NCBI GenBank assembly: GCA_003693705.1
Contig: RBZT01000499.1
Span: forward strand, 186,001 to 250,000
Direction of reading: 5' to 3'
Source of the DNA: Polymyxa betae A26-41
Lineage: Eukaryota; Protista; Endomyxa: Phytomyxea
DNA length: 64,000 nt
The notes under the pieces were generated by a model. It was not told where the DNA came from and ran no database searches. It saw only the letters and a list, made by a program, of their open reading frames with translations. Below are positions 17,153 through 60,372 of the stretch, in pieces (position 1 is the first letter of the stretch; the number at the start of each line of letters is the position of its first letter). The position numbers were made by a program, and so were the translations under genes.

Positions 17153-18115
17153 TTAAAGTTCTGGGACCTCATTTGGATGTATTTCCGGGTATAATGGAGC
17201 CACAACGAACAGGCTTCTCGTGCCAAGATCAGGAACAACAGGAACAGAGGGCATCAATTTAGCGCCTTTCGCCATCTCACAGATCTTCATGCAATCATAT
17301 CCAAGGCAGTCGCCATCGTGTTCCGGCTTCGACGAAAGCAGATTTCCCGCCAAACCGGCGACATTACTCCAGCAGCAATCCAACGGGGTTGTGAACCCTT
17401 TTAGGATGCTTTTCAGCGCCGGGCTCTCTTGCTGATTTCCATCCCGATCGCGAAATACTCCCAGCGCGTGCAGAGTGAAATCTGTGACATCCAGCCGAAG
17501 CTGACGTTTGTTCATATGAGCAAACTGTACGCCGCAAACTAGTCTTGAAACGGATGCAACCTGCGAATAAATTCGAAGAATATCTTCAGCACAAAAGAAA
17601 CTGTTTCTGATCGCGATGACATGAGTGGCATCATAGGAACGATCCCAAAGCGGCTGCAAATGCGACTTTTCTCCCTCGAGGAAATACACAAACGGGATTC
17701 GCTTGGATTTCAGCAATGATTGGAACATCTCGACCCATGGCGGGGCCAAATCCAGCATCTTGTTAATTGATAACGAGACATGAAGTTCTGCTTTGCCCAA
17801 ACGATCAATTAAAATCATGATTTGGTCGAAAGCATTCCCCATTTGTTCCATTGTTTCGATTTGGACGATAACGAATAGTCTGGAGCCCTCTTTCGGTGAT
17901 GACACTGGGTGTTCAGTTAGACGCATGTGGGAACATACATCACCGAATCTGAAATCCATCCTTGGTTCGTAGATAAAAAAAAATAGCAGAATTCCTAATA
18001 GAACAGCCACAAGAGTGATAAGAATGATTGTCATAACTAGCCCCAACATGCCACAGTGGATACGCCCAATGCTACATATCCTTTTCTTGTTTTTGGCAGC
18101 GTCGTAATGGACCAT
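17153..18115 (-). CDS. CAP59/GT69-like (alpha-1,3-mannosyltransferase-like) type II membrane protein, copy A
   Basis: N-terminal TM anchor; FFCAEDILRI and CCWSNVA resemble GT69 FCxEDILEL and SCWNG; intronless. Confidence 0.6.
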   Translation of the reverse strand: MVHYDAAKNKKRICSIGRIHCGMLGLVMTIILITLVAVLLGILLFFFIYEPRMDFRFGDVCSHMRLTEHPVSSPKEGSRLFVIVQIETMEQMGNAFDQIMILIDRLGKAELHVSLSINKMLDLAPPWVEMFQSLLKSKRIPFVYFLEGEKSHLQPLWDRSYDATHVIAIRNSFFCAEDILRIYSQVASVSRLVCGVQFAHMNKRQLRLDVTDFTLHALGVFRDRDGNQQESPALKSILKGFTTPLDCCWSNVAGLAGNLLSSKPEHDGDCLGYDCMKICEMAKGAKLMPSVPVVPDLGTRSLFVVAPLYPEIHPNEVPEL

Positions 18116-18442
18116 TAACAAGCAGGTGATTAAAGAAAGAGATTCACAAAGCTAACGAAGCAGCATGTAGGTATAAACACAGAAGAACGACCTTAGGGTA
18201 CAATCGAATTTTTGATATCGATCTACGCAAAGCGTGGACAGATAGAGCGGCTTCAAATACTGTATTTCTAATGATTGATATGTGATCATTGGGGTCTAAG
18301 GTTGTATGGAACCGATTTGAGCTTTATCAGGCATTGATATCCATAACGTAAAGGTTTCCATGGTATTGAGCACTGCTGAGAAGCTAAGGTGTATGATACT
18401 AATATTGTCAATAAATAGGAACTTAATCATGCCATTGAAGCT

Positions 18443-18725
18443 TCATAAAGGCAGAGTAAACGCCAACGCAACCTGAGACGATGCATTTGTAGCTGTGGTC
18501 AATTCAATGAAGTTGCCGTAATGGCTGGATCGATACCCGTAAACGACGTGGAGTCTGCGATCATCATCGCTGTCGATCCATACTGATAGACTCAAAAGGA
18601 CGGGAAGGGGACGTCCACCACATCGAGCTAGTTGATAACAAAAGTGTATCACATAATGGACCGAAAATATAGATTCAGGAAGGCATTGGTTGAGGTCAGC
18701 CAGGAATCCGGATGGAATAACCTGA
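18443..18725 (-). pseudogene. Orphan, frameshifted last exon of a dual-Zn2Cys6/PAS gene (duplication by-product)
   Basis: Homologous to 20463-20752 (FHPDSW, CYQLARCGGRPLPVLLS) with frameshifts and no upstream exons. Confidence 0.8.
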
Positions 18726-18767
18726 TGTTGCAATCAGAGTGATCAAGAAAAAAAAATGTGAGTATTG

Positions 18768-19150
18768 ACCTACATGTTCAGCACAGAGTTCAACGTGACA
18801 ACATATTAAAAGAATACCTGATCGACGCCGTTATTTTTTTGCCTTCGATGTCGGACGTTTTGCGAAAGCTTCTAGCGCTGGTTTCTACACAATCCGCTCT
18901 CCGACAAAGTTTCAAGAGTTTCGCTTTCTTCACGTTCAATCGCTTTTAGGACAGTCTGACAAAAAGAAAAACGATCGCCTTCACCGTGACACGAAACCCA
19001 ACTGGATTGTACGTTGCAGCAGCAACCAGCAGTTGTGTTCAGCTGAGCAGCTGCAGTTCGGCTCAGAATGGTCACGACTAACGATTTACGCCTGCGAATG
19101 TTTACAAAGAGTTATCGTTCTACCGGTAGTGAGTACCACGGTAGTTGAAC
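18768..19150 (-). pseudogene. Decayed copy of VPS10 promoter/exon 1
   Basis: Aligns to 16712-17125; start ATG changed to GTG (cac at 18982-18984); several indels. Confidence 0.8.
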
Positions 19151-19181
19151 AGGGAGAGCAGTCTGATTCAATGTTTGTAGG

Positions 19182-20150
19182 TTAAAGTTCTGGAACTTCC
19201 TTAGGATGTATTTCTGGGTATAATGGAGCCACAGCGAACAGGCTTCTCGTGCCAAGGTCAGGAACAACAGGTACAGAGGGCATCAATTTAGCACCTTTCG
19301 CCATCTCGCAGATCATCATGCAATCATATCCAAGGCAGTCACCATCGTGTTCCGGTTTTGATGAAAGCAGATTTCCCGCCAAACCGGCGACATTACTCCA
19401 GCAGCAATCCAACGGGGTTGTGAACCCTTTTAGGATGCTTTTCAGCGCCGGGCTCTCTTGCTGATTTCCATCCTGATCGCGAGATACTCCCAGCGCGTGC
19501 AGAGTGAAATCTGTGACATCCAGCCGAAGCTGACGTTTGTTCATATGAGCAAACTGTACGCCGCAAACTAGTCTTGAAACGGATGAAATCTGCGAATAAA
19601 TTCGAAGAATATCTTCAGCACAAAAGAAACTGTTTCTGATCGCGATGACATGAGTGGCATCATAGGAACGATCCCAAAGCGGCTGCAAATGCGACTTTTC
19701 TCCCTCGAGGAAATACACAAACGGAATTCGCTTGGATTTCAACAATGATTGAAAAATCTCGACCCATGGCGGGGCCAAATCCAGCATCTTGTTAATTGAT
19801 AACGAGACATGAAGTTCTGCTTTGCCCAAACGATCAATTAAAATCATGATTTGGTCGAAAGCATTCCCCATTTGTTCCATTGTTTCGATATGGACAATGA
19901 TCAATAGCCTGGAGCCCTCTTTCGGTGATGACACTGGGTGTTCAATTAGACGCATGTGGGAACAGACATCACCGAATCTGAAATCCACCCTTGGTTTGTG
20001 GATAAGATGTAGTAGCTCAATTCCAAACAGAAAAGCCACAGAAGAGATAAGAATGGTCGTGATACATAGCCCCAACATGCCAAAGTGGATACGCCTCATG
20101 CCACATCGCCATCTCCTTTTTTTGTCTTTAAAAGCGTCGTATTGACCCAT
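19182..20150 (-). CDS. CAP59/GT69-like type II membrane protein, copy B
   Basis: Near-identical luminal domain to copy A; diverged N-terminus/TM. Confidence 0.6.
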   Translation of the reverse strand: MGQYDAFKDKKRRWRCGMRRIHFGMLGLCITTILISSVAFLFGIELLHLIHKPRVDFRFGDVCSHMRLIEHPVSSPKEGSRLLIIVHIETMEQMGNAFDQIMILIDRLGKAELHVSLSINKMLDLAPPWVEIFQSLLKSKRIPFVYFLEGEKSHLQPLWDRSYDATHVIAIRNSFFCAEDILRIYSQISSVSRLVCGVQFAHMNKRQLRLDVTDFTLHALGVSRDQDGNQQESPALKSILKGFTTPLDCCWSNVAGLAGNLLSSKPEHDGDCLGYDCMMICEMAKGAKLMPSVPVVPDLGTRSLFAVAPLYPEIHPKEVPEL

Positions 20151-20462
20151 CAACAAGCAGGTGATCGAATGAAAGGAAGCTCACAATGCTAATGAAGCAG
20201 CATGTAGGTATACGACAGAAGAAAACTTGAGCACTACAGAACACTTTGATAGCTACTGTAAGTACTTACGCAAAGCGCGCACAGATAGAGCGGCTTTCAA
20301 ACTCGACTGAAGTGTGATCGTGACATGGGGTAAATGTTATGTGGAATCTAACTAAGATTTATCAGACATTGTTATCCATGAACCACAGTTATCCATTGGA
20401 ATGAGCTTTGTTTAAAAGGTAAGAAGTATGATAGTAAGACAATGAATAAAATATTAGTGAGG

Positions 20463-21799
20463 TCATAGAGGCAGAGTGAATGCCAACGGAACCTGAGACG
20501 ACGCGTTTGCAGGCTGTGGTAAATCCAATGAGGTTGCCATATCGGTTGGTTCGACAACTGTAAACGAATACTTCGCATGGAAACTGCGATCATGAACTCT
20601 GTCAATCCATATTGAAAGACTCAAAAGGACAGGGAGAGGACGTCCATCACATCGAGCTAGTTGACAATAAAATCTCTGACAAAGCGGACCGAAAAGATAG
20701 AAATTCAGGAAGGCTTTGGATACGGTCAGCCAGGAATCCGGATGGAATAACCTGATGTTGCAATCAGAGAAATAAGTGCAAAATGTAAGCAGTTACTTGT
20801 ATACAAAAGGTAGCAAGTTTGGATTCCTATCAGGAGGATGGATTCCTTTCGATACCGCATCCTTCAGTATATCTGCCGAATAACCAAGAGCACTAAAAGC
20901 AGCAAGATTCATGGTTAACGATGTCCTTCCATTGTTCCGGGAATATACGATTTCTGGACTAGTATGAGAATCAGCTGGTGCCAAAACCTATTACAATGTT
21001 ATATTTTACATTAAACGCCACAACGATTACCTACCTTATCAGGCTCATCAGAGTGAATCATATTGATTCCAGATGCAGAGCGGTGACGGAAACCGTCTGA
21101 TATGATTTGGAAGTAGTCAAATCGACTTCGAAGCTTCTGTATCTCCTCAAAAGGCAATGCCCATTGCATGTCTTCACATATGCTATCACTAGAGCTGCGT
21201 TAGTATAACAGACAGAGCAGAATCTCAAAACGTAACAAACAGTTTTCCGGGCGAGAAAGACAATTCGAGCGCTACCAGCTTGTTGAGAGTATCCGGCCAG
21301 GTAGTCCAAAACTCTCGAACCGATGTAGGGAAAGGTAAAGTGGCAGCCAAAGGCACCTGAAACGTTACTCAGCTGAGGAAATGAAGAGTTATTTGGTCAA
21401 GCCTGGCAATTGGCACAATTGCTCAGCTGACCGTCAAGGTTCCAGTTTACTCACCATCTCACGAGCCCATACTCGAGGGACGTGCTTAGAAATCGGTATG
21501 GTTGATGTCAAACAGGAATGACTTAGACCCAAACGAACACAGCGAGGACATGGCCGTAGTGTGCTGCAGGCTACTTTAGAGTGAGAGCATGCACTGCATG
21601 CTGCCGTCCGCAGCCGTCTTGGACGGTGAAAACCGTTACTGATCTGGCGATCATGGCAAGATTCGTCGATCTCCAGTTTCACGCAGCGGCTGCATGGTCG
21701 GCGTCCATCGCATTTCTGTTTCCGTTCAGCACAGGCAGAACAAGCAACTCGGACTCTGGCTTGCTCGTTCCGACTAGCCTGGACTAGATTTCCAACCAT
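20463..21799 (-). CDS. Dual Zn(II)2Cys6 + PAS-like transcription factor, paralog ZC1
   Basis: Two C-x2-C-x6-C-x5-C-x2-C-x8-C clusters; spliced exons give TMNLAAFSALGYS...FHPDSW...QLARCDGRPLPV; extra intron 21357-21454. Confidence 0.85.
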
Positions 21800-22134
21800 G
21801 GAATCCCTATTCAGTGGCTTGGATCCTAATACGACACATGATTATTGCCGGTATGCAATGAGAAGGATTAGTCAACAACGAGAACGATAGCAGAGTTTGA
21901 CATCCCAGTCACGCAGTTTCCAGAAAGTGCCAGCTTGACTGAAAGTTCGGTCCCATTCATTATTAAATACAGCATACATATGGAAAAAAAGGCTGAAGTC
22001 TTTCTAGTCCAATCGAAGGCAGCTCCTTTCTGATGCAGACTTCGGGCATTCTGTTGTTTAGCGATTCCTATAGAGGGGAGAGATATTGCGGATGCTAATT
22101 AGAACAATTTTTGATAGACCCGACTGTAGCGGAA

Positions 22135-23383
22135 TCAATTACTGTCTGGACCATGCAGTACTGGTGTATCTGAGATCTGGGAAGGCTCACATGCCAAATC
22201 CTCAGTATTCTCAACTGCTAATACTGCCAATGTTGTGCCTACAGCAGGCGGGTCGGCGATTGTAAACGAATACGTCGCACAGAAATTGCGACGTTTATCG
22301 CTCCAGGCTGAGAAAGTCAGAAGGACAGGAATTGGGAGGCCATCGCATCGAGCAAGTTGGCAGTAAAACTTTTGGCATACAGGGCGGAATAGATAGTAAT
22401 TTAAGAACGCTTTCGAGAGAACCACCCATGAATCCGGATGAAACATCCTGGTGTCATTGCTTAGGATTACCAAAGCATAAGCCGGCTGCCTTACTTGTAT
22501 ATAAATGGTAAAAAGTCTGGATTTCTATCGAAACCATGAACCCCATTTGTCACTGCATCCTTTATTATATCTGCTGAATAGCCCAGCAAACTGACAGCCG
22601 CATTGTTCATTGTCAATGACGTCGTTGGCTGTCCATTTCGAGAATATCGGAATTGTGGTGTTGCAATAGAACTTGTGGCAAAATCCTACTATAAAGTTTA
22701 ATAGAATGACACCGCACTATAATAAAAACGATGACCTGGTTAGAGTGCACCATGTTAATTCCAGAAATCGAACGGCGACTGACTGATTCAAGTATTCGGG
22801 AATAGTCAAGTCGATTTCTAAGATTTTGAACCTCATCAGGATGCAGCGCCCATCCAATGCTCACGCAGAGTTGATCCCTAGAAACCAATTACCAAAGAGC
22901 TAAACAGTAAACAAAAACTAACAATCTCTCAGGCGATAAAGCTAATTCTAACGCTACCAGCTTATTGAGAGTGTCTGGAAAGGTCATCCAAAAATCTCGA
23001 ATCGAACGAGGGAAAGGTAGATTCATGGCCAAAGGAACCACTTCCCGAGCCCACATTCGAGGAATGTATTGTCTCATTGGCAGAGCTGGTGCTACACACG
23101 AATGGCCCAGACCTAAACGAACACATCGCGGGCATGGCCGGACCGCACTGCAAGCGACTTTGGAATAAGAACATGCAGCGCATGCTGGCGCTTTCAGTCG
23201 TCTCGAACGGTGGCACCCGCCGCTAATTTGACGATCTTGACATGAATCGTCCCGTTTGAGGCCAATACAGCGACTGCAGGGTCTTTGGCCATCACATCTC
23301 TGTTTTCGGGCAGCACAAGTGGAACAAGCGACCCGGACCTTGCACCGCTCGCTTCGGTTGGCTTGGACCAGATCCGAACCCAT
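22135..23383 (-). CDS. Dual Zn(II)2Cys6 + PAS-like TF, paralog ZC2
   Basis: CSTCAARKQRCDGQRPCSRC and CAACSYSKVACSAVRPCPRC; last exon FHPDSW...CQLARCDGLPIPV. Confidence 0.85.
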
Positions 23384-23749
23384 TTAGAATGAAGGAATTC
23401 GGACTCAGAAAATTCCGAATCACCCTCTGATGGCAAAGTGGAGGAATACTTTGTAACATCAACGTGCCAAGTAAACGCAGCCTGTCCCCTGCGTAAAGGA
23501 GAGAATAACCGGCGATTATCTAAGCGAAAGGTGCCAATCAGAAGTCCAAAACTTTCTGCATCCGTTTGGTTCAGGCGGTTGATTGTTTCCGTTATATCTG
23601 CAGCTAATATCTGTGTCTGCCATACTGCCCGAAATGAAAAGCTTCGCACTAATATAACAGGATACACACGAATCCAATTATGTATGCTTTTTAGAAAACA
23701 ATATTCATATATAGGTTATGAAATTTAAAAGAAAAGGAATTAAACACAA

Positions 23750-23997
23750 TTAGAATGTCTTTGAATTGACCACAGCGTGTGGTTCTACGATTGTGAATGA
23801 AAACGTCGTCGCATGGATGGTGCGGTATTGATCTTTATCCAACCAGGCTGAGTACCTCACATGGACAGGAATAGGACGACCATTACATCATGCCAGTTGA
23901 CAGTACAATTTCTGATGAACTGCACTGTAAGTTGGATGATAAATTAGAAATTTAAGATTGCCTTCGAAAGCTCCAGCCATGAATCCGGATGAAATAC
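23750..23997 (-). pseudogene. Orphan last exon of a dual-Zn2Cys6/PAS gene with stops and frameshift
   Basis: Translates FHPDSWLELSKAILNF*, then in another frame HQKLYCQLA*CNGRPIPV. Confidence 0.8.
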
Positions 23998-24606
23998 CAA
24001 ACCTCCAGTTACGCACTTAAATAATACTCGTATGTTTTTATAGCAGCTTTCCAACAATCTTTCTATTTTATCTGGGATTGATCCAAAAACGCAGGTGTTT
24101 ATCCGTCATCTTTCAAACCTGAAAAAATATACAAAAAATCTCATTTCCAAAGATTTAAATACCCACCCCCTTAACAAAATCCTGAAGCAAAAACCAAAAA
24201 TCCAATACCCCAACAAAGGTATAATTCGAATAAACAACCCCCAATAACTTCAAAACATCCAACATGTATAAATATCTTGTGATATAACTGACTAAATATT
24301 CATTGATTGACTATCCATTTTTTTCCAAATTGATTAATACTTTCTCCGTTTCCTTTTTCTCATGTCATTAGTAGCAACCGCTTCCTGACTTCATCAAAAA
24401 TACAATTTTTGGCTGTCCCGAAAACGATCCACAACTTTCATTGTCGGGAGCAGATTCTGAAGTTTAAAACCGGGCTATTAGACTATCGTTCTATGGGCGA
24501 GCAGGGCAGGCATCACTAAATACAGCGTATGACATAATTGCCATCTGAATTGAAGGTTTGGTCCAGCAGACTGTTTAGTTAGGGCCTCAACAAATCCAAA
24601 ACCTAA

Positions 24607-25801
24607 TTAACAACCTTTGCCATCAATAGGAAATTTTGAACTCGACGAGTCGCAGACGGCTGAGCGTTCTGCTATTGTGAACGCAAAGGAGGCTCGGTAA
24701 ACGCCCTCTTTGCTGATCGTTCCTGTGAGACTCATGTGGACAGGAAGAGGACGGCCATCACACCGTACCAGCACAGAATCAAACCTCTGACATATCACTG
24801 ATGGGAAGAGATAGAAGTTTAAGGCCACATGGGAGAAAACTACCCAGTTATCTGGATGAAAAAAACTGTAACCTTAAGTTAGGACGAGTTAGAGTATAAT
24901 GAAATTGTTACTTGTAGACGAGTGGGAGAAAGTTTGGATTGTTATCAGCAGCATGGACTCCCTTACTCACTGCGTCTTTCAAAGCATCTTCTGAATAGCC
25001 AAGTAAAGCACGAGCCGCATCGTTCATGCTCATCCATGTGCATGCACCATCTCGGAGATACGAGAATTCGGGACAATCGGGAACTCGGGGAATTGCTTTA
25101 GGGTCCTAAAATTGATTGGTTTTTACAGTACCATTACATGAGATACCTACCTGAATGCATTCAATCGTATCACCTAAACAAAGCGGGGATTGATTGTTAG
25201 CTTGTGAATGTGATACTATCTCCAGAGAATTCAATGTTCTACGAAGGTTCATTATGTCTTCAGGAAGAACCGCCCACGACAGTTTCTCGCAGAGTCTATC
25301 ACTGAAACAAGATTATTGAAAGCACTGAGAAGAAGATGCAACAGACATTCCCTCAGGCGACAAGGCCAATTCGAGTGTTACGAGAGGATTGAAGAATTTT
25401 GGCCAATTGATGAAAAATTCTCGAACGGATCGCGGAAAGGGAAGAGTAAGCGACAATGGCGCCATCTCACGAGCCCAGATTCTGGATATATGTGTAGGTG
25501 TCAGCAAATTTGATGCTACGCAAGCGAGGCTTAATCCCAAACGAACACATCGAGGGCATGGCCGCCCTTGACTACAAGCGACTTTGGCATGCGAACATGC
25601 ATTACAGGCGGTCGTCCTGAGACGACGGCGAGCACGGCGACCGCCGACGCCAAACTGGCGATCTTGACAGGAATCGGCTATTTGGAGCTTGATACATCGA
25701 CTGCATGGCCGTTGATCATCACATCTGAGTTTGCTTTCAGCACAAGCTGAACAAGCAACACGGACCCTGCTTCTTTGTGAAACACTTTGAAATGAAATCA
25801 T
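24607..25801 (-). CDS. Dual Zn(II)2Cys6 + PAS-like TF, paralog ZC3
   Basis: ORF 25313-25801 with two clusters; downstream exons MNDAARALLGYS, FFHPDNW, RCDGRPLPV. Confidence 0.85.
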
Positions 25802-26179
25802 TTGGATTGGGCACTAGTCGGGGGAACCCGATCCGCGATAAGATTTGCGACTGTGGACATCTACCCGTGATGAGTTAAGTAACCCGGAGACCCTATCGGC
25901 CTATCCCAAGTTGCATCTTTAATGAAGGAAGTGAACCATTCCTAAACTGAAGTGTTCAAATCGATCGTTCCAAAGCAAACATGCTTCATGAACGATCAAC
26001 ATGCGTAATGAAACTCGGGAAGTCTTTCTAGTAGATGGGAATACAACCAGAGCAAAGCAAAAAATCTGTGCTGATTAATAAAGTGCTATTGTATATTCCC
26101 CCAACCCCAAAGGTCTGAGAAATAATTGCAAATAGCTGCAATCAGTAGACCGAAGACGTGGGATATTAGTCCCTTGATA

Positions 26180-27477
26180 TCAGAACAACGAAAAAAATAT
26201 GTATTGAAAAAAATTGTTAAGAATATCATTCACGGCAGACCCCATCCTGAGCAGCCGATGAGACATCTGTAAAACCAGAGGGAAAATTAGAATCTGTACT
26301 GAGGTAGCTAGTGCAGTGGCAATAGAGGGCGTGTCTGTTGGAGTAAAGGAATATGTCGAATAGAAATTGAGATCGTTATCGACATGCGTTGAGGCAGTCA
26401 TATAGACAGAGAGAGGACGACCATCACTACGTGCGAGTTGGCAGTAAAATTTTTGACCTATAGGAGCATGGAGATAGAAATTTAAGATCCTCTTGGAATT
26501 GACTAGCCACGAATCCGGATGGAATAACCTGACGTCATGAGTCAGGATTCTTCGTATGGGTAGGATTGTGTATCATACTTGTATATCAAAGGCAATAAAT
26601 GCGGGTTTTTGTCAACGGGATGGATCCCCTTTGACACCGCATCCTGTAAAACGTTTGCTGAGTAACCGAGCAACAGGGAAGCAGCAAGGTTCATGGTCAA
26701 TGAAGTATTTTCTCCATTTTGATAATAAACCACTTGTGGCGTATCCGAAGAAATCGGCGTCAGGTCCTATCACAACGACCTTTCTTAGATTAAAACACTA
26801 CGTTATTATTGAAAATTTACCTGAGGAGAACGTACCATTTCAATATCAGACGTAGCAAGGAGAGGGCAGCGCTCCGATTGAATTTGATAAAAATCAAATC
26901 GCTCAAGAAGCTGTGCAATTTCAGATTGAGGGAGAACCCACATTAATCCCTGACATATGCCATTCCTATCAAAACATTACGGAATGAACTTGAAAATCCA
27001 AAGCAAAACGGACAATTTTTTGGGTGCCAAGGTCAATTCGAGTTTCATAAGTTTGCTGATAGTATTGGGCCAGTTGATCCAAAATTCTCGAATCGACTGT
27101 GGAAAAGGTAAATCAGTAGTTAGCGGGATCATCGAGACTGCTATTAGGTGTGGGATACGTGTGGGCTTAGATACAAAGGCGTTCACACATGTTAGACCCA
27201 GCCCCAAACGAACGCACCGAGGACATGGTCGCACTGTGCTGCAAGCGACTTTAGAATGAAAGCATGCACTACAAGCTGGCGTCCGCAGACGCTTTGTGCG
27301 ACGACAGCTGGTGCTAATCTGGCGACTTTGGCACGATTCGCCTCGTTTTAGGTTAACACATCGGCTACATGGCCGTTGCCCATCGCATTTCTGCTTTCTT
27401 TCAGCGCAGGCAGAACAGGCGACCCGGACCTTTGCACGCTTGGTTCGACTAGCCTGGACAAGCACCGGCGCAAGCAT
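26180..27477 (-). CDS. Dual Zn(II)2Cys6 + PAS-like TF, paralog ZC4
   Basis: MLAPVLVQASRTKRAKVRVAC..., two clusters, TMNLAASLLLGYS, FHPDSW, QLARSDGRPL; 3' end approximate. Confidence 0.85.
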
Positions 27478-27587
27478 ACGGAAGAGACGACCCGATTTAA
27501 CCAACGAAAGGTAACAAATAACAAGCTCAAGCTGAGCATTGAAAAATTGCGTGACATAATATTGTTTAATCAGGACCTGGACGTCCA

Positions 27588-28186
27588 TTGACCTAGAGTA
27601 CAACTGACCAATGCCGGCAATGCGCACAACAATTTGATCAACTCCGCACGCAGTTTATTTTGACCTACAGGTACTTTGACCTATAATACGGACATTTAAC
27701 TGCGACCTGAAAATTGACCTACAGGCTACTGCTACAGCCACCATTTGGACCTACAAATTGACCTACCGGTATTTACACCGTGGAGGATTTTATTTAAAAG
27801 TCGAATTAATAAATTTTGGAGGAGTGTCTGACTCTTCCGAATGCCGCTTGAAAACAACGAATTTCCTGGCGCCATACGATATATTGTGTTGTTGTTTAAA
27901 CCACATCAATGTACATGCAAACCATGCTTCAAAAATGGTTGAAAACATTGCATAAAAACATGCAACTGCGCCTGATAATAATTGTTGAAAGTAAACGAAC
28001 CAGTGAAATCCAATCCAAGACTGAAATAATAATGTAAGCGGAGCGATCTGCAAAAATTTGTCAGGCACGCTTTCGCGAAAGCAATAGGTTTTAGGGTTTG
28101 TAGGTCAATTTGTATTTTGTAGGTCAAAGTGGTGACGGTAGGTCAATGTGTAGGTCTCTACGGTAGTGGTACAGTACAAAGGTCAA
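27588..28186. mobile_element. Putative non-autonomous foldback/MITE-like element with oppositely oriented TGACCTAC repeat arrays
   Basis: (T/G)GACCTA(C) at ~27589, 27661, 27677, 27715, 27747, 27759; reverse complement GTAGGTC at ~28100, 28119, 28138, 28150; imperfect inverted arms; no TSD identified. Confidence 0.55.
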
Positions 28187-28419
28187 GATTAGTCTTGTTA
28201 ATAAAAAATAGGCTCGGTCATCGGCAGGCCTCTTTTATATACGGGCCGATCCGTAAATTTTGACATTTATTTATCAGTTAATCCCTAAAAGTTGCTGTTT
28301 ATCAAACTGTAGTCATTTAAATACAAAATCGAAAATTAAGTCCAAACAAATTTGCGTCAAGTCACGGAATTTGTTCAGACCTAAATCCGGTCTGGAAAAA
28401 TTATTTACGTCAAGGTTTT

Positions 28420-29090
28420 GAATGCTGTGTGGTTGTGGAAGTCATCCAGTGAGATTCTTCTCTTTCTATCTCTACGGATGGCTTGATCAAACCTGGTTAG
28501 TCACTGCATCAAATATCGAGCGCCCGGATGATGATAAAATACTGAAGAAGTTCATTCTGCCGAGACTCCAATTATTTGAGATATCCCGATTGATTTTTAC
28601 GCCACATTTAGAACAGATCATGTACCAAGGATCTACCGATTGTCGTTTGAACTGAGCACATTGAAAGAACATCTCTGCTGTGATTTCGGTTGTTCCGGCT
28701 TTAGCTACCACTTGATGCAGTGATCAATGAGGATTGGACATCCAGTCCTCATGATATCGTTGCACGAGATTATATGGCAAACTGATAGGATAACAGTTGA
28801 TAACTTTTGTTGAACGCTGGTGGATCCGGGTCGATTTCAAGAGATCGACAGATATGTGCTTGTATTTATAAAATCGAGCATGAATTCAGCATCGTGCCTT
28901 GGACACAAACATGTTGATTAGAACGTTCGCGTTTGTGCATTAGAAGTCCTCTTTTAAACCGATACAATACGATTGAATCTTTCATATTGGTAGCGGATGA
29001 TCATCCTCCATCTGCACTGCTGATATAGGAATATTGAACTTGATATTGGGCACATTCAGTGCATTATATGCTCGTGTACAGATGCTAAAT
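28420..29090 (-). pseudogene. Degenerate reading frame, possibly a TnpB/Fanzor-like nuclease C-terminal relic
   Basis: About 200 codons in one frame with only about 4 stops, including ...QCAQFKRQSVDPWYMICSKCGVKINRDI (Zn-ribbon/RuvC-III-like CxxCG-x3-NRD). Confidence 0.25.
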
Positions 29091-29894
29091 CTGCAAAAAC
29101 ATCACAAAATTATGTACCAGTAAAATGGATGTACTCGGTTTCTGGAGTTCGCACAGCGACGAGATAATCAGAAAAAAATACGCAACAGGATGCAGCCGTT
29201 CGACCTAGTTTGTCGAAAGCAAAGGGAACTGGTCACAAAAGCACATCGTTGATCATCCTGGCAATCAAATTGTAGCTATGAAATAGCTTGAATTTATTGA
29301 TTAAAGGACGTCAAGGCAGGTGGAATGGTAGAATTGGCTTCAGGAGTTAAAGGAATGGGCGTCAATCTTTGTTTCTGGCCTGAAAGTTCTCAAGATCAAC
29401 GACATCAACTACTTAGTTGCTGCTTGATATTGTATTAATTTATCTGTCATTTCACCGGCGCTCTTTTATCGCATTCAGCTGCTGCTGTTGGGCAAAGAAA
29501 GATCCCAGACAGAGAGTTCGCTTGTCTTTTAGAATCGTGATCCAGTAAGGTCAAGGGAGTTCAACAGAGTTCTTAGTAGTACTATAGCATGGCAATCCAT
29601 CTGCTGTACTTTTATAAATTGCAAGAAAACCGGAGCGAGCAATTTCCTGATTGGTTCTATTTGCTATTAGCTCTCGGACGGCACTTCCCTCCAATCCAAC
29701 AATTTGCCAATGTTAACAAATGTATTCCCGATATTCTGGAACTAATTCAGAAATGGCCAAGAATTGGATTTGGCAGCGCCGCCTGTTGATCCTTTTCAAA
29801 CACACAATTTCATTCCATGCAGTTTGCCATAGGAACGAAACGTCTAATTTCACCAGAAGTGCCTTAGAAATTACAGTGTAACTTCAACATCTAT

Positions 29895-31086
29895 TCAAGG
29901 GCATACAATTCCTTGCGTAGGAGTGCTGATAATGGAAGAATTGGATGGAGCAGGACGTTCTACCATCTTAAATGTAAACGTCGCTCGATAAACGCCGTCT
30001 TTACTAATCGAAGCTGCGAGAGTCGCCTGGACAGGAAGTGCCCGACCATCACATCGTGCAAGTTGGCAGTAGAACGTCTGACAAGTTACGGATGGATGAA
30101 GATAGAAATTCAAGACCACGTTGGAATATGTGACCCAAGAATCCGGGTGGAAGAAACTGAAAAACGATTATCATTTAGAGCAGTGAAGTTTACGATTGAA
30201 ATTGTTACTTATAGATAAGTGGAAGGAAGTTTGGATTATTATCAGCGGGATGAATTCCATTTCTCACTGCATTGTTCACTGCATTTGCTGTATAGCCAAG
30301 CAACCGAAGACCGGCGCTATTCAAGGTAATCGAGGTGCCCGTGCGATCTCGAAAGTATGACATTTCTGGAGCGTCAGGGACGCTTGAAATCGTTGTACAA
30401 TCCTATAGACAGATCAATCAAAGTGAAGAATTTACGAAGACTGACTGGTTCACTTCATAGCATTCAATGGTATCGTCTAAACAATTTAAATGGTGATTGG
30501 ACCCTTCTGATATAAATTCCAACGAATCAAAACCTCTTCGTAGGATTTCCATATCATCAGGAAGCACCGCCCATGTCATTATGCTATAAAGTCTAACCCT
30601 GATATCAATTAGAGAGAGCATCAAAACCAAGAACGCAGCGAACAGTTTTTCAGGCGATAACGCCAAATCAAATATCACATTCGAACTGAGGAGTTTCGGC
30701 CAGCTAATCCAGAACTCTCGAACAGACCGCGAAAACGGCAGAGTAAGCGCTAAAGGTGCCATTTCACGAGCCCATACTTTAGGTGTTAGCAAACTTGATG
30801 CAACGCAAGCGAGACTCAGCCCCAGTCGAAAACAACGAGGACATGGCCGTTCTTGGCTGCAAGCGACCTTGGCAAACGAGCATGCACTGCAGGCGGCCGT
30901 TCGCAGACGATCTCGACGAGGACGACGCCTGGAGTTTTTCTGTCGGTCTTGGCAGGAGCCGTCTATCTGGAGCTTGAAGCAGCGGGCGCATGGACGCTCC
31001 CCATTACATCGTACTTTGCTGCCAGCACAAGCTGAGCATGCAATAAGGACCCTCTCTCTTGGAGGTGGACCTCAAACCAGGATCAT
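29895..31086 (-). pseudogene. Dual Zn(II)2Cys6 + PAS-like TF, paralog ZC5, in-frame TGA at codon 5
   Basis: ATG ATC CTG GTT TGA (31086-31072), then an open frame through both clusters and intact-looking downstream exons. Confidence 0.7.
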
Positions 31087-31419
31087 GTTGTTCAGCAATG
31101 AGCACGGAGACCTGATCTGTGTTAAACGGAACTGAGCGCACCCAACTCCTCCATGGTATCATACAGTTGCAGGCCGTACTCAGGCATTCACAACAATCCA
31201 TACAAGCTCCAATTGAATGAAAAAACCACCAATAAGCCAGAGCAGATACGGCTGAGAACTCAGAATTGCCAACATTACGCTCAATAAAATCTTGTCAATC
31301 CACAGTTTAATTTCGCACCTATAGTTATGTTTATGAATGCGTTGGTGTCGAGATAGAAACATTCTGGAAGCATAACATTGGATAGCAAAAGTATAACCGT
31401 TTTGGTATGCAGTATCCAG

Positions 31420-32236
31420 TCAGTGATCGAAAAAAAACACGGAATCTGGGACAGAGGGAGAGCCGGCGGCAGCAAATGAGAAACTGGTTTTGACACTCTG
31501 ACTGTAGGAAGAGACTGTTATATTGACAGGAAGGGGACGACCATCAGATCTCGCTATGGTCTGTACAAGAGAAACTTGAGGATTAGGTTGGAAAGGGTCA
31601 GCCATGAATTGGGATGGAAGATAATGATAATCGGAGATCATCAGAATCCTGCAAATGTAAGCAGCCTATTCCTTACTAGTATAGAAAGGCCCACACAGAT
31701 TACAGAGTGCTCAAGGTTAATGGCAAAAAACGACAATCCTTCAGGCCACAAAGCCAGATCAAGCGCGATCATCGGGTTCCAACGATCGTGGGCCAGCTAA
31801 CCCAGAATTTTCGCGAGCGCTGGAACGGTAATGCGATCTGCAAGGGCGACATTTCCCGAGCCCATAATCGAGGGATAGAGCCGGTTATAGTCCAAACTGG
31901 TGCCAAAAATGATCGACATAATCCCAGACGAAGAAGGCCGTCCACTGCTTCAAGCCGTTTTCGCATACGAACAGGCATCGCAGGCTGATAATCGCAACGG
32001 CGTCGAAGGCGACAATTGCTCGAACGGTCTTGGCAGGAATCGCTGATCCCAACGTTCGCACATCGTCTGCATGGACGCTGTCCATCACATCTCGACTTCC
32101 TGTATACGATAAGCACATGAGCTTCAGTGATGATCGATCAACGTCAACAAAAAATGACCTTGAAGCGCAGGCAGATGAGGCGATCCCACACCCTTGAAGA
32201 ATGAGATGATAATAGAATAGTCGGCTCGGCGATCAT
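31420..32236 (-). pseudogene. Decayed dual Zn2Cys6/PAS paralog ZC6
   Basis: First Cys lost (IASSAC), frameshifts in cluster 2, middle exons deleted, last exon retains IARSDGRPLPV. Confidence 0.8.
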
Positions 32237-32659
32237 ACCGCAGATCACTGCTGATCACGTCTTCTACAAACCCTACTTCTGCCCACTCAATTCCAACTTT
32301 GCTGGAAGCGAATTGATTGCGATTGCATACGTTGGTGTTGATAACGGCCCTTGGACGACATAACTGATATCAGGTATGTGGTATCGGAGGTGGTTGATAA
32401 ACGAAATGCCCATTGGTTTGATGGTTGACATTTGAATAGCGTTTGATAGGGCAGAGCTACTGCTGAGTCAGGACCAGAGCCTAATTATGGCATGATGAAC
32501 CCAAAGCAATCCTAACTTCTTGCATAGTTCAATTGAAGGAGACGGGTTAGCAATTCGCGAATGCGTTCAAATTAACGAATTGCAGTTAATTGGGATCAGG
32601 TTGTCGCTCTGCTAGAATAGCTGGAGGAGAGAAGGCTATGTATTAAAATATAAACACGA

Positions 32660-33864
32660 TTAAATAAGAGTTTTGTCATGGGCTAAGATGGCGAGAGAAG
32701 CAGGTACAGCAGTAGGCTGAGCAATGGTAAACGAGAATGTGGCTCGAGCTGCGCGTGGTGAGATTGAGACGACCATGTGGACAGGTAGAGGACGACCATC
32801 ACATCGTGAGAGCTGGCAGTCAAATTTCTGAACCGGTAGAGGCATTTGAAAGGGAATCGTTTGACATGAAGCCAGTAAGAAGGAGACATAAATATGTAAG
32901 ATGACATTAGACAGGATCAGCCATGAATCAGGATGAAAGAAACTGGATTCGTTAAGAGAGAGATCCGGCCATGAATCAAATATTCTTACTTATAGATGAC
33001 GGGCAGAAAGTTATAATTTTTATGTATAGGATGGACACCCGACATGGCCGCTTCCTCCAGATCTTTCTCTGAGTATCCGAGCAGGCTGAGAGCGGGCCTA
33101 TTCATGCTGACGGCGTTGCCTGAACCCGTTCGATAATAAGAGAATTCGGGAGTCCCAGGAGGCATCGGCCTCATTTCCTGATAGAAAACCCGTCAAATGG
33201 ATATCCGATGCAGACGCGAGAAGGCACCTGAACATATTCAATCATGATATCAACAGAATCGGAATCGCAAATCTCATAGTCCGATGCTATTTGGAACGTG
33301 TCGAACTGACTTCTAAGATTGCCAAGCTGATCAACAGGAACGGCCCATTGCAAGGCACCGCACAGCATATCCCTAAGCAGGACATTACAGAAAGCGAGGC
33401 AATCAACAGCGATCGAACAATGATTCCGGCGACAGCGCCAGATCCAGCGCCTCCGGCTGAGTGAGCGATTTTCGCATGTTGAGAAAGAAATCGCGAACGA
33501 ATTCAGGGAAAGGCAAGGTGAGGGATAAAGGCGCCATCTGACGAGCCCATACTCGGGGAACACGTCCAGATAGCTGCAAACTGGATGCAACACATTCGAG
33601 ACCAAATCCCAAGCGAGAGCAGCGAGGACATGGTCGTTCGGTGCTGCAAGCGACCTTGGCATACGAGCAGGCGCCGCACGCGGCCGTTCGCAAGCGCCGA
33701 GACCGACGACAGCCGGCGGATTTCAGGCGATCCTGGCAGGATTCGACGATCTGGAGATGAACGCAGCGGCTACACGGGCGCTGCCCATCGCATCTGAGCT
33801 TGGTTCTCGCACAGGCCGAACAGGCGATCCGGACCCTTCGACAGTTGCTGGGACGCGGGATCAT
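32660..33864 (-). CDS. Dual Zn(II)2Cys6 + PAS-like TF, paralog ZC7
   Basis: ORF 33403-33864 with two clusters; SMNRPALSLLGYS, FFHPDSW, QLSRCDGRPLPV. Confidence 0.85.
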
Positions 33865-34964
33865 CAGACTGTCTCGGAACGGGAAACCCCAACCTGTCCG
33901 AGTGTGCGGGATGGGCTAGTACAGTTATAGCGCGGCTCCTGGCTGCAAACTTCCCGGAGCCTTCATCAAACAGCAGTGAGTCTATTCGGAGTTCGTATTT
34001 CTTTGTTAGGAACAATCTCGTGCAGGCGCCGGTTCGTCGTCAATGAAGGCTGTAATTTTAACTTATCGCCTTTATAACGTGTCGCTGCATTGGAGATGCA
34101 ATTGGGTTTGTGCGGTTCGGCATCTTCCTGGGTGGCCATGGCAAAGGTATCAAGAGTAAGGGCAAGAATCTCTACAATGGATATCATCAGGTAGATTATT
34201 CAACTGGATTTGGGATCCCCGATGGGCAAAGATCTATTGAAGTAGCCGTAGCCGATATTCGGCCATTGCCAAGCTCGTTGTTCGCCATCTCTGGCTTCTT
34301 GCATATAATTATGGCAAACTGACAAAGATCGTAGTGCATTTGCTGAAGCTGCGGGTGTATAAGAGCAACCTTAACAATGCTAGTTGATTAAAACATGCGA
34401 AGAGCAGTCGTAGATTGACAGTTCCAAATCTAGGGAAAGATTCGAATCGATTACTATCATGACGCTCGAGGCAGACATAATCACATACTGATTAGAGGAG
34501 TCAACAGAGATGAAGCCAAATACAGCTATGATGCCAACATAACAGGCCTTTATCTCTCTATGTGTTGCTGCAGCCTTCTAAAAGAGGTTTTCGCAATGCG
34601 AACTTGTCAGGGCGCATGGCTGCCACCGCCCGCCCGCAAAACCTGATGCAACTGATCCTAATCTAACGGTGTCGTTAACTAAACACTCGTCAGCAGCCGC
34701 AATGGTTACAACGTGGACAGGCCAGCTATCGACATTCGCTTGTTCGGCGCAAGCACCGTGCTGAAAGTAAGATGACTCTTGTGTCGGCTGGATTATAAGA
34801 ACAAAGGGCTGGACATCTATGGATGGCGAATGAGGTCAGCTTTCCTTCAATTTACTGGACTTTAAATAGTAACAATATCATAGATCTCAGTAGATAGGCT
34901 CACAGAGTTATTTGCAATTGGTATGGTTTGTTTAGGAAATTTACAAAATCAAAAGGAAATCTTG

Positions 34965-36208
34965 TCATGATGGTTCATCAGGCGGAGGAAGGGCTAATAA
35001 TGTGTCGGGTGCAGCGGGTGGATCAGCGACCGTAAACGAAAGGCTCACCCGAAAATCTTTCTCATAACCTTTACCCCCAATCCAGACTGACATCGTCATA
35101 TGAACAGGAACAGGACGTCCATCACATCGTGCTAATTGGCAGTATAATTTCTGAAATAGCGGCTGGTACAGATAGAAATTTAATATAACGTTCGAGAGAC
35201 TCAGCCAGCTATCTGGATGGAAGAGCCTATGAGATTGATCAGTTCCGAACCATGACCAGAATTTCATAATCTGACTTGTAGATGAAAGGTACAAAGTCTG
35301 GATTGTTTTCAATGCAATGGACTGATTTTAGTACAGCTTTCTTTAAAGTGTCAGTTGAATAACCAAGCACACTACAAGCGGGCGCATTCATGGTGATGGA
35401 TGTCTTATGGAATGCATCCGGTGCATGATTTCGAAAGTAAACGATTTGTGGCGTTCCCGGTTGATGAAGCGTCGGTGAGAAATCCTATCGCAACAGTTAG
35501 TTTGAAGATTCAGTGATGATATTCACATGACAAATGAGACCTCAATAGGCAGTATCATGCTATTTACAGATTGTGATACAAGGTCTTCATGATCAGCTAA
35601 GACTTTATAGCAATCGAAGTGCTTGCGAAGTTTCTGCAAATCGGGACCAGGTAAAGCCCATAGCAGAGCATCACAGACGCCGTCCCTGAATAATTGTTAC
35701 AGAAAGTCATATTGATGTCCGATTAAGCAACGAACAATCGTTCAGGCGACAAAGCCAGTTCGAGGGCGACGAATGGATTCAGAGATTTCGGCCAGTTGAG
35801 CCAAAACTCTCGTAGCTTATGCGGGAACGGTAAAGCGACTGCCAAGGGCACCATTTCATTAGCCCAGACCCGACGGGTAAGCTTGGGTTTCTGTACAACA
35901 CTGGATGTCACACACGAATATACCATGTTTAGACGAACGCAGCGCGGGCAAGGTCGCAAAGCGCTGCATGCGACTTTTGAGTATGAGCAGGAAGTGCAAG
36001 CTGCCGTCTGTAGACGATGGCGGGGTCGGCGACAATCATGATTGTTAGCAGGGCGATCTTTGCAGGACCCGGCTAATCGGAATTTAACACATCGGCCGCA
36101 TGGGCGCTGTCCATCGCATCGCAGCTTCCGTTTAGCACAGGCTGAGCAAGCGATCCGAACCCTGCGTCGATCGCTCCGAGCCGGGCCAATGCTCGGAGCG
36201 AGAACCAT
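34965..36208 (-). CDS. Dual Zn(II)2Cys6 + PAS-like TF, paralog ZC8
   Basis: MVLAPSIGPARSDRRRVRIAC..., two clusters; TMNAPACSVLGYS, LFHPDSW, QLARCDGRPVPV. Confidence 0.85.

Positions 36209-58733: not shown

Positions 58734-60372
<1,639 letters not shown>

What the first reader, a model, noticed from the sequence alone, without database searches (positions are those of the whole stretch)
20463..36208. Candidate new sensor-TF family: two Zn(II)2Cys6 clusters fused to a C-terminal PAS-like domain
Seen: each paralog has two complete C-x2-C-x6-C-x5-C-x2-C-x8-C clusters about 16-19 aa apart (RVACSAC..K..CDG.RPCSRC and TAACSACS..KVACS..RPCPRCVRLGL). After splicing, the C-terminus reads 'TMN.AA..LLGYS...L', 'FHPDSW' and 'CQLARCDGRPLPV.(L/M)T'. 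These match the PAS hallmarks N.aa..llGys.eel, hPeD and rrkDG..iwv. Known: Zn2Cys6 is predominantly fungal and usually one per chain, binding CGG half-sites as dimers. The x8 loop plus a C-terminal PAS is typical of the Ert1/Rds2/Gsm1/AcuK-AcuM metabolic regulators. Inference: these are single-chain 'tethered dimer' DNA binders with ligand-sensing PAS domains, in what looks like a non-fungal protist. They could form a one-component small-molecule or host-cue sensing system.
Basis: partly seen in the sequence, partly recalled or inferred. Interest (0 to 1): 0.9.

Follow-up and report, generated by a model that had tools for sequence, protein, structure and literature searches.

The report
Double zinc-cluster PAS regulators, tandem array
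A plant-root parasite (very probably Polymyxa betae) carries a head-to-tail row of seven diverged genes for small regulators that join two fungal-type zinc-cluster DNA-binding modules to a PAS sensor-type domain, a real but untested variant of a design known from fungi.

Summary
Window 20463-36208 (minus strand) holds seven paralogs. Each has two Pfam-significant Zn2Cys6 clusters 19-21 residues apart. Each splices through 3 short GT-AG introns (4 in one copy) into an intact 343-382 aa frame. One copy has a TGA at codon 5. A degraded copy and a C-terminal fragment also lie there.

Pfam does not detect PAS in the window's exons, or in a full-length relative. An AlphaFold2 model of the closest uninterrupted relative, with the window's exons in its alignment, scored pLDDT 88. 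It gives a textbook PAS fold, and all 50 best PDB matches are PAS/LOV. A family profile matches a PAS_3-bearing protein at E 1.6e-15.

The genome matches the unannotated Polymyxa betae draft (Rhizaria). Relatives exist in Spongospora and Plasmodiophora as uncharacterised entries with automatic names.

The closest described design is fungal AcuK/AcuM/Ert1/Rds2 (one Zn2Cys6 plus PAS). Chains with two clusters are reported in a few fungal factors. I found no paper on the combination.

The "tethered dimer" and ligand-sensing ideas remain inference. No RNA reads could be obtained. The scan noted the same architecture on other pieces of this genome.

Verdict: a real family and a new variant of a known kind.

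The parts
34965..36208 (-). Exons 36208-35736, 35685-35541, 35484-35276, 35226-34965. Zn cluster 1 at 36062-36148, Zn cluster 2 at 35912-35998. The PAS region is encoded by exons 3 and 4.
   Evidence: intact frame, introns of 50, 56 and 49 nt, all GT-AG. It is the closest copy to the uninterrupted relative L001 (55% identity; grouped with it in the tree).
32660..33864 (-). Paralog B (ZC7), 351 aa. Exons 33864-33419, 33372-33234, 33177-32990, 32942-32660. Zn clusters at 33736-33822 and 33592-33678.
   Evidence: intact frame, introns of 46, 56 and 47 nt.
31423..32232 (-). Degraded copy (ZC6), a pseudogene. The first Cys of cluster 1 reads Ser. There are frame breaks in cluster 2, in the helical region and in exon 4. 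Exons 2-3 are missing.
Evidence: three-frame reading.
29895..31086 (-). Paralog D (ZC5), 342 aa from the first codon after the stop. The ATG is at 31086 and a TGA at 31072-31074 (codon 5). The rest is intact. Zn clusters at 30952-31038 and 30805-30891.
   Evidence: translation reads MILV*GPPPRERVLIAC.
26180..27477 (-). Paralog E (ZC4), 381 aa. Exons 27477-27014, 26965-26821, 26766-26579, 26528-26180. Zn clusters at 27331-27417 and 27187-27273.
24607..25801 (-). Paralog F (ZC3), 352 aa. Exons 25801-25347, 25301-25151, 25105-24912, 24865-24607. Zn clusters at 25667-25753 and 25520-25606.
   Evidence: Exon 4 gives a sub-threshold PAS_9 match (E 0.13) and exon 3 a sub-threshold PAS match (E 0.3).
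23753..24105 (-). Orphan, broken copy of exon 4 only ('FHPDSW ... CNGRPIPV ... FSFT'), split over two frames with a stop.
22135..23383 (-). Paralog G (ZC2), 368 aa. Exons 23383-22923, 22877-22736, 22685-22495, 22447-22135. Zn clusters at 23240-23326 and 23096-23182.
20463..21799 (-). Paralog H (ZC1), 364 aa, five exons: 21799-21455, 21356-21241, 21188-21035, 20987-20797, 20751-20463. The extra 98-nt intron lies at 21357-21454. Zn clusters at 21656-21742 and 21512-21598.
   Evidence: Removing the extra intron restores the family motif 'WAREM|VPL'.

Best explanation
The region is a co-oriented tandem array of a lineage-expanded family of small (about 350-380 aa) transcription regulators in a plasmodiophorid, very probably Polymyxa betae.

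Each protein has four parts:
1. A two-part DNA-binding head: two Zn2Cys6 binuclear clusters joined by a basic, flexible stretch of 19-21 residues.
2. A disordered tether.
3. A small conserved helical domain.
4. A C-terminal PAS domain of the PAS_3 type.

Shown here: the domain make-up, the intact spliceable frames, the conservation pattern, and the presence of the family in other plasmodiophorids and in at least one unidentified eukaryote.

Inferred:
- One chain places its two clusters on two CGG-like triplets. The tightly kept spacing suggests a fixed half-site geometry. The chain would thus do alone what fungal Zn2Cys6 factors do as dimers.
- The helical-PAS module controls activity, either by binding a small molecule or by pairing with itself or with paralogs.
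- The paralogs have kept similar DNA heads while diverging in the PAS and helical parts.
For: Zinc clusters:
- Both pass Pfam in all seven copies.
- Cluster 1 aligns to the solved Hap1/Cyp1, Put3, Pho7 and Cep3 domains.
- All 12 Cys plus the 'RPC.RC' residues are invariant across nine full-length members.
- All 18 members have exactly two clusters, with a gap of 18-22 residues and a Lys at the fourth position of the first loop in both clusters.

PAS domain:
- The AF2 model of P0026, with the window's exons in the alignment, has pLDDT 88 and pTM 0.81. It shows two strands, four helices, then three strands.
- Foldseek's top 50 hits are all PAS/LOV, best E 2e-5.
- The independent aligner gives Z 10.6-8.7 over about 95-120 residues, all PAS/LOV/AHR/HIF.
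- The ESM Atlas agrees by shape and by features.
- The family profile matches the Pfam-positive PAS_3 region of P0089 with probability 98.5% and E 1.6e-15.

Full-length model: both clusters are confident (pLDDT about 81-93). The inter-cluster stretch scores about 60-68 and the tether under 50.

Functional genes:
- Seven intact frames.
- dN/dS of 0.15-0.31 between paralogs.
- Identity by domain: clusters 68-73%, PAS 52%, helical 47%, linkers 20-40%.

Splice sites: the uninterrupted relatives L001 and S. subterranea P0003 read straight across the predicted junctions. Genomic relatives P0001 and P0002 run out of frame exactly at the intron-1 position.
Against: - No Pfam PAS model reaches threshold on the window's exons (best E 0.13-0.3). 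None reaches it on the full-length relative either.
- Profiles made from the window's exons alone do not match P0089 significantly (E 0.17 and 0.5).
- The fold was predicted for a relative that is only 43-55% identical overall to the window's paralogs, not for a window protein.
- No DNA-binding, ligand or oligomer data exist.
- dS is saturated, so the dN/dS values are rough.
- Expression in this organism was not tested.
- Paralog D has an early stop.
Confidence: 0.7

Rival explanations
1. The PAS domain is mainly a pairing surface, not a ligand sensor. The proteins would work as homo- or heterodimers among paralogs, as proposed for fungal AcuK/AcuM. That would give complexes with four clusters and combinatorial specificity from the seven paralogs.
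For: In the fungal Zn2Cys6-PAS factors the PAS domain is implicated in AcuK-AcuM interaction, and the factors act as heterodimers (PMC12719309). Seven co-located diverged paralogs would suit combinatorial pairing. The conserved helical domain before the PAS core resembles the flanking helices that often mediate PAS dimers (general knowledge of PAS domains).
Against: Nothing here tests pairing. The one homodimer prediction gave no verdict, so it counts neither way. This reading does not exclude ligand control, and the two are compatible.
Confidence: 0.3
2. These are simply divergent members of the already described AcuK/AcuM/Ert1/Rds2/Gsm1 family, inherited or acquired from fungi. They would regulate gluconeogenesis and respiratory metabolism, with a secondary internal duplication of the cluster.
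For: The domain order is the same: N-terminal Zn2Cys6, C-terminal PAS. The generic PAS signature N-x7-G of that family is present ('MN.AA..LLG').
Against: - There are two clusters instead of one.
- The proteins are 350-380 aa.
- The 'G-x-I-x3-N' part of the motif quoted for the family is not seen.
- The exhaustive search with exon 1 and the profile search brought no protein named as an AcuK/Ert1/Rds2 homologue among the near hits. The next hits were multi-cluster Agaricomycete proteins without PAS.
- No direct comparison with AcuK/AcuM sequences was possible, because none was at hand by reference.
Confidence: 0.12
3. The array is evolutionary debris: duplicated genes that are no longer expressed or functional.
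For: One degraded copy, two orphan exon-4 fragments and an early TGA in paralog D show ongoing gene death in the array. No expression data exist for this organism.
Against: - Seven frames of about 350 aa stay open across 3-4 introns each, despite 40-58% protein divergence.
- dN/dS is 0.15-0.31.
- Conservation is concentrated in the domains.
- All 12 Cys are kept.
Confidence: 0.05

Closest known systems
Fungal AcuK/AcuM, Ert1/Rds2/Gsm1, Aod2/Aod5, Pas2 (Zn2Cys6-PAS regulators of gluconeogenesis, respiration and hypoxia)
   Same: A Zn2Cys6 DNA-binding head at the N-terminus and a PAS domain at the C-terminus of one chain. They recognise two CCG/CGG triplets (CCGN7CCG for AcuK/AcuM). Their PAS domain is needed for function (PMC12719309).
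   Different: The fungal proteins have one cluster per chain and bind as homo- or heterodimers, and they are known only from fungi. The window's proteins have two clusters at a fixed spacing of 18-22 residues, a distinct conserved helical domain, and come from Rhizaria. Common descent was not tested.
Fungal chains with more than one Zn2Cys6 domain: Bhr1 of Dichomitus squalens, an Alternaria brassicicola factor, and uncharacterised Agaricomycete and Mucoromycete proteins with 4-6 clusters
   Same: More than one PF00172 domain in one polypeptide (PMC13532241; PMC10305253).
   Different: Bhr1 joins its clusters to a septin-like NTPase. The Alternaria protein has a transmembrane segment. The Mycena and Flammula proteins are strings of clusters with no PAS-like C-terminus. 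None has the helical-PAS module.
Uncharacterised plasmodiophorid entries: Spongospora subterranea CRZ11057.1, and Plasmodiophora brassicae CEP01242.1 (PBRA_001848) and CEO94339.1 (PBRA_000124)
   Same: True family members. They share the two clusters, the 'P.S...P.P' motif, the helical region and the PAS domain, and align along their whole length.
   Different: The named plasmodiophorid entries found here are one from S. subterranea and two from P. brassicae. Their genomic context was not examined, so I cannot say whether they also lie in arrays. Only automatic names exist ('Zn(2)-C6 fungal-type domain-containing protein', 'PAS domain-containing protein'). Neither P. brassicae genome paper mentions them.
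One-component PAS transcription factors in general (bacterial PAS-HTH such as FG214; animal bHLH-PAS such as AHR/HIF/ARNT)
   Same: A PAS domain and a DNA-binding domain in one chain. The PAS model superposes on these PAS domains at Z 9-10.
   Different: The DNA-binding domain is of another kind (HTH or bHLH rather than Zn2Cys6). Sequence identity is only 6-20%. No cofactor-binding residues could be assigned.

Membership tests
Zn2Cys6 binuclear cluster (Pfam PF00172) | Six Cys with spacing C-x2-C-x6-C-x5..12-C-x2-C-x6..9-C | tested here: met
   Fourteen matches, two per paralog, all C-x2-C-x6-C-x5-C-x2-C-x8-C. All 12 Cys are invariant in nine full-length members.
Zn2Cys6 binuclear cluster (Pfam PF00172) | Score above Pfam's gathering cut-off (21 bits) | tested here: met
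   35-50 bits with two matched stretches in each of the six first-exon frames scanned (paralogs A, B, E, F, G, H); paralog D's first exon was not scanned. The degraded copy scores 19.8 bits with one stretch.
Zn2Cys6 binuclear cluster (Pfam PF00172) | Basic residue in the first loop at the position that contacts the CGG triplet in Gal4 (Lys18; recalled from the Gal4-DNA structure, not re-derived here) | tested here: met
   Lys at the fourth residue of the x6 loop in at least 80% of both clusters over 18 members; K28 and K77 are nearly invariant. Actual DNA contact is not testable here.
PAS domain (Pfam clan CL0183) | Five-stranded antiparallel sheet with the order two strands, four helices, three strands | tested here: met
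   The AF2 model of relative P0026, whose alignment includes the window's exons 2-4, has strands at 102-107 and 112-116, four helices, then strands at 178-186, 192-203 and 209-217, with pLDDT mostly above 90. All top PDB and Atlas matches are PAS/LOV. No window protein was folded, because the joined step was left out.
PAS domain (Pfam clan CL0183) | Significant match to a Pfam PAS model | tested here: not met
   The window's exons give PAS at E 0.15-0.3 and PAS_9 at E 0.13, below the cut-offs. The full-length L001 protein has no PAS hit at E up to 1. There is an indirect link only: the family profile matches the PAS_3-positive region of P0089 at E 1.6e-15. Profiles from the window's exons alone fail.
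AcuK/AcuM/Ert1/Rds2 family | A single N-terminal Zn2Cys6 cluster per chain, acting as a homo- or heterodimer | tested here: not met
   There are two clusters per chain in all members. The oligomeric state is unknown.
AcuK/AcuM/Ert1/Rds2 family | C-terminal PAS domain with the motif G-x-I-x3-N-x7-G (as given in PMC12719309) | tested here: inconclusive
   A PAS fold is present. N-x7-G is present ('MN.AA..LLG'). The G-x-I-x3 part is not seen in the exon 3 consensus.
AcuK/AcuM/Ert1/Rds2 family | Sequence grouping with fungal members in a tree; binding to CCGN7CCG; control of gluconeogenic genes | not tested
No binding or expression data exist.
Bhr1-type double-cluster activators | Septin-like P-loop NTPase joined to two Zn2Cys6 domains placed near the C-terminus | tested here: not met
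   No septin or NTPase match in Pfam, and the clusters are N-terminal.

The most novel reading that the evidence does not exclude
Plasmodiophorids, and at least one other unidentified eukaryote, evolved a single-chain 'two half-sites in one protein' version of the Zn2Cys6 factor, coupled to a PAS sensor. They then multiplied it in tandem arrays, so that each paralog reads a different small-molecule or host-derived cue while addressing related DNA sites. This would form a one-component sensing system that steers the life-cycle switches of obligate intracellular root parasites.
Probability: 0.2. Interest if true: 0.75.

Novelty: new variant of a known kind. Interest (0 to 1): 0.55.

Why it matters
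Almost nothing is known about gene regulation in plasmodiophorids. They are obligate, unculturable root parasites that cause clubroot and powdery scab and carry rhizomania and cereal viruses. This genome shows few Zn2Cys6 matches: 17 in the six-frame scan, of which 10 lie in this array (a lower bound). The family could therefore be a main lineage-specific regulator set.

A natural single-chain double-cluster head with a fixed spacer would also be a useful test case for how Zn2Cys6 modules read the spacing and orientation of half-sites without a coiled-coil dimer. The small size of these proteins (about 350 aa) makes them tractable for structural and binding work.

The finding is less surprising than first scored, for three reasons. 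Zn2Cys6-PAS is a known fungal design. Double clusters have been reported. The family already sits unremarked in protein databases.

Tried and rejected
- **Homodimer prediction.** The run with the helical-PAS part of the relative P0026 gave 'no answer'. It counts neither for nor against pairing.
- **Word-index search with P0026.** It found only itself.
- **Sequence search of PDB.** The PAS part alone gave nothing meaningful. The family profile gave only insignificant hits to the E. coli DOS heme-PAS (E 0.47-0.97).
- **Exon-only profiles against P0089.** Not significant.
- **First mixed alignment (A1).** It misplaced the exon 4 pieces on the zinc cluster, because 'RCDG.RP' occurs in both. I discarded it and rebuilt the alignment without the clusters.
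- **FG214, the PDB hit with the highest identity.** It proved to be a bacterial heme PAS-HTH protein, not a zinc-cluster factor.
- **Source organisms of L001, L002, L012 and P0025.** These could not be named; the clusters carry no names.
- **Heme-binding idea for the His of 'FHPDSW'.** Rejected as unsupported. The His is not invariant in the family (Asp in P0025 and P0156). The 'hP.D' motif is a common structural feature of PAS_3-type domains (general knowledge).
- **Literature searches.** Zn2Cys6 together with Plasmodiophora returned nothing. One broad query was uninformative.
- No joined window protein was given to any search or folding tool; those tools received exons by reference only. Joined models were built only inside scripts, for frame checks, identities, dN/dS and a tree.


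Full report
**What is there**

A six-frame scan for the Zn2Cys6 spacing finds 14 complete clusters in the 64-kb window. All are on the minus strand between 21512 and 36148, in seven pairs, and none lies elsewhere. Pfam Zn_clus (PF00172, cut-off 21 bits) matches both members of each pair in the six first-exon frames I scanned (paralogs A, B, E, F, G and H) at 35-50 bits. Cluster 1 also aligns to solved Zn2Cys6 domains: Hap1/Cyp1, Put3, Pho7 and Cep3.

**Gene models**

Reading the minus strand in three frames shows the same four coding blocks downstream of each cluster pair. The joins are short GT-AG introns at conserved places.

| Intron | Phase | Position |
|---|---|---|
| 1 | 2 | After 'LSPE.' |
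| 2 | 0 | In a variable linker |
| 3 | 2 | Inside 'IY(K/N)\|(L/F)FHPDSW' |

The introns are 45-56 nt long. The copy at 20463-21799 has one extra 98-nt intron at 21357-21454. Removing it restores the family motif 'WAREM|VPL'.

With these joins all seven copies give open frames of 343-382 aa. The copy at 29895-31086 has ATG-ATC-CTG-GTT-TGA, a stop at codon 5, and is otherwise intact.

The copy at 31423-32232 is a pseudogene:
- the first Cys of cluster 1 reads Ser;
- there are several frame breaks;
- exons 2-3 are missing.

Orphan broken copies of the last exon lie at 23753-24105 and, outside the finding, at 18446-18777.

Those tools received exons by reference. The joined models were made only inside scripts, for frame checks, identities, dN/dS and a tree.

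**Are the genes alive?**

The paralogs are old. Protein identity is 42-60% and synonymous sites are saturated (dS 1.3-2.8). dN/dS is 0.15-0.31, a rough figure given the saturation.

Conservation follows the domains:

| Region | Mean identity among the seven paralogs |
|---|---|
| Zn clusters | 68-73% |
| PAS | 52% |
| Helical region | 47% |
| Linkers and tail | 20-41% |

This pattern is that of maintained genes, with some birth and death at the edges of the array.

**Organism**

The genome handle has 27,085,814 bases in 1,001 contigs at about 45% G+C. The Polymyxa betae draft is described as 1,001 contigs, 27,085,946 bp and 45.1% G+C, without annotation (PMC6328671).

The nearest named relatives are from Spongospora subterranea and Plasmodiophora brassicae. 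The host is therefore very probably P. betae (Rhizaria, Plasmodiophorida).

**Relatives**

An exhaustive phmmer search of 1.84 billion representatives with exon 1 of paralog A found only 165 proteins at E up to 0.001. Among them:
- **S. subterranea CRZ11057.1** (P0003, 351 aa).
- **P. brassicae CEP01242.1** (336 aa) and **CEO94339.1** (444 aa). A shorter P. brassicae isoform is auto-named 'PAS domain-containing protein'.
- **L001**, a 1180-nt Logan contig with an uninterrupted 350-aa frame, 55% identical to paralog A.
- **L002**, a 70-kb contig from another, unidentified eukaryote. It carries seven intronless paralogs in tandem, and a second contig from the same sample carries two more.

All full-length members align end to end, with all 12 Cys invariant. 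All 18 members examined have exactly two clusters, separated by 18-22 residues.

The relatives L001 and P0003 read straight across the predicted junctions. Two genomic relatives (P0001, P0002) leave the frame exactly at the intron-1 position. This supports the splice models indirectly.

In a maximum-likelihood tree the seven window copies, L001 and the Spongospora protein form one clade (support 91/94). L001 groups beside paralog A, though with weak support (83/75). The unidentified eukaryote's copies form their own clade, so that organism expanded the family independently.

Elsewhere in this genome at least two more double-cluster genes exist, on contigs C892 and C966. The C892 gene has a PAS-like part and resembles PBRA_000124.

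**Is the C-terminus a PAS domain?**

By Pfam thresholds, no:
- single exons reach only E 0.13-0.3 for PAS and PAS_9, although the matches are colinear with the models;
- the full-length L001 protein has no PAS hit at all.

By fold, yes:
- AlphaFold2 on P0026, the last 234 residues of the L001 protein, gave mean pLDDT 88 and pTM 0.81. Its alignment held relatives and the window's exons 2-4.
- The model has a helical region (residues 12-66), a low-confidence linker, then two strands, four helices and three strands.
- Foldseek against PDB returned only PAS/LOV domains among the best 50, from E 2e-5 at probability 1.00.
- An aligner that does not depend on Foldseek gave Z 10.6-8.7 over about 95-120 residues, again only PAS/LOV/AHR/HIF.
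- The ESM Atlas agreed by shape and by language-model features.

One sequence bridge also exists. P0089 is a 510-aa protein with two Zn clusters and a Pfam-significant PAS_3 domain. The family profile matches its PAS_3 region at probability 98.5% and E 1.6e-15. Profiles built from the window's exons alone do not reach significance against it.

I conclude that the PAS assignment is sound for the family. For the window's genes it rests on 43-55% overall identity to the modelled relative, plus the shared motifs.

**Whole-chain picture**

The full-length model of the L001 protein shows the following:

| Segment | Confidence (pLDDT) |
|---|---|
| Zn cluster 1 | about 91-93 |
| Zn cluster 2 | about 81-89 |
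| Basic inter-cluster stretch | 60-68 |
| Tether | under 50 |
| Helical-PAS module | high |

Both clusters keep a Lys at the fourth place of the first loop. In Gal4 this position contacts the CGG triplet; I recall this from the Gal4-DNA structure and did not re-derive it here. The tightly kept spacer is the best argument that the two clusters work as one two-part DNA-reading unit.

**Comparison with what is known**

- **Fungal Zn2Cys6-PAS factors.** AcuK/AcuM, Ert1/Rds2/Gsm1, Aod2/Aod5 and Pas2 are well described. They have one cluster per chain, act as homo- or heterodimers, bind CCGN7CCG, and need their PAS domain (PMC12719309).
- **What the window's proteins share and lack.** They share the domain order and the generic N-x7-G signature. 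They have two clusters. They lack the G-x-I part of the motif quoted for that family. They are about 350 aa and come from Rhizaria.
- **Common descent.** I could not test this, because no AcuK or AcuM sequence was available by reference.
- **Two clusters in one chain.** This has been reported in fungi: in Bhr1 with a septin-like NTPase (PMC13532241), and in an Alternaria factor (cited in PMC10305253). Uncharacterised Agaricomycete, Mucoromycete and cryptophyte proteins carry 4-6 clusters.
- **Literature.** No paper in the library joins Zn2Cys6 with Plasmodiophora. The two P. brassicae genome papers do not mention transcription factors or zinc clusters.
- **The x8 loop.**

**Verdict**

The family is real, maintained and lineage-expanded. 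However, it is a new variant of a known kind, not a categorically new system, and it is already present, unremarked, in protein databases.

The mechanism remains inference: a single chain reading two half-sites, under PAS control by a ligand or a partner. The homodimer prediction gave no verdict.

Earlier notes of this scan on the same genome describe the same architecture on other contigs and several details of this array. The details I re-tested (the array, the 98-nt intron, the TGA at codon 5, the ZC6 intron) hold.

Noticed in passing
window 31072-31074 (minus strand): Paralog D starts ATG ATC CTG GTT TGA. A single stop at codon 5 sits in an otherwise intact 342-aa frame, and there is no in-frame ATG before the first cluster. 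It could be a very recent inactivation, a sequencing error or an unusual start.
   Followed up: partly
window 21357-21454 (minus strand): A 98-nt GTGAGT...TTTCAG intron is present only in the copy at 20463-21799. It splits the conserved 'WAREM|VPL' motif and is about twice as long as the family's other introns.
   Followed up: yes
window 17153-20156 and 18446-18777: Two similar ORFs of 322 and 324 aa lie at 17153-18121 and 19182-20156. The one I scanned (19182-20156) gives a sub-threshold CAP59 mannosyltransferase match (E 4.8e-6, below the cut-off). They flank a broken duplicate of the last exon of the neighbouring regulator, consistent with a roughly 2-kb tandem duplication at the array's edge.
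   Followed up: partly
L002:1071-9538 and L012:2506-5077 (Logan sample DRR671455): An unidentified eukaryote with dense, intronless genes carries its own tandem arrays of this family: seven copies of 334-385 aa on one contig and two on another. They lie next to HMG-box, sestrin (PA26) and MORN genes. The expansion is independent of the window's in the tree.
   Followed up: partly
window exon 4 of all copies, e.g. 20466-20750; alignment A1: The string 'RCDG(Q)RP' occurs both in Zn cluster 1 ('RCDGQRPC') and in a PAS strand ('ARCDGRPLPV'). It is strong enough to make MAFFT place the exon 4 pieces on the cluster. This is probably coincidence, but it is conserved in all seven copies.
   Followed up: no
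P0164, P0166, P0169, P0174 (Flammula, Mycena, Favolaschia, Sistotremastrum); P0159 (Hanusia phi); P0032 (Dichotomocladium): These proteins of 300-430 aa consist of four to six Zn2Cys6 clusters in a row and no other recognised domain. All are annotated as hypothetical.
   Followed up: no
P0089 (510 aa, source unknown): This protein has two Zn2Cys6 clusters about 75 residues apart and a Pfam-significant PAS_3 domain. It is a looser version of the same architecture and serves as the sequence bridge to PAS. No encoding contig is on record.
   Followed up: partly
window 14260-15516, 42478-43590, 55228-56745, 56883-57893, 59148-59903: Ordinary eukaryotic neighbours surround the array: sortilin/Vps10, a FYVE-finger protein, pantothenate kinase (Fumble), a cyclophilin-domain protein and a TIP49/RuvB-like ATPase. 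All are seen as exon-sized ORFs.
   Followed up: no
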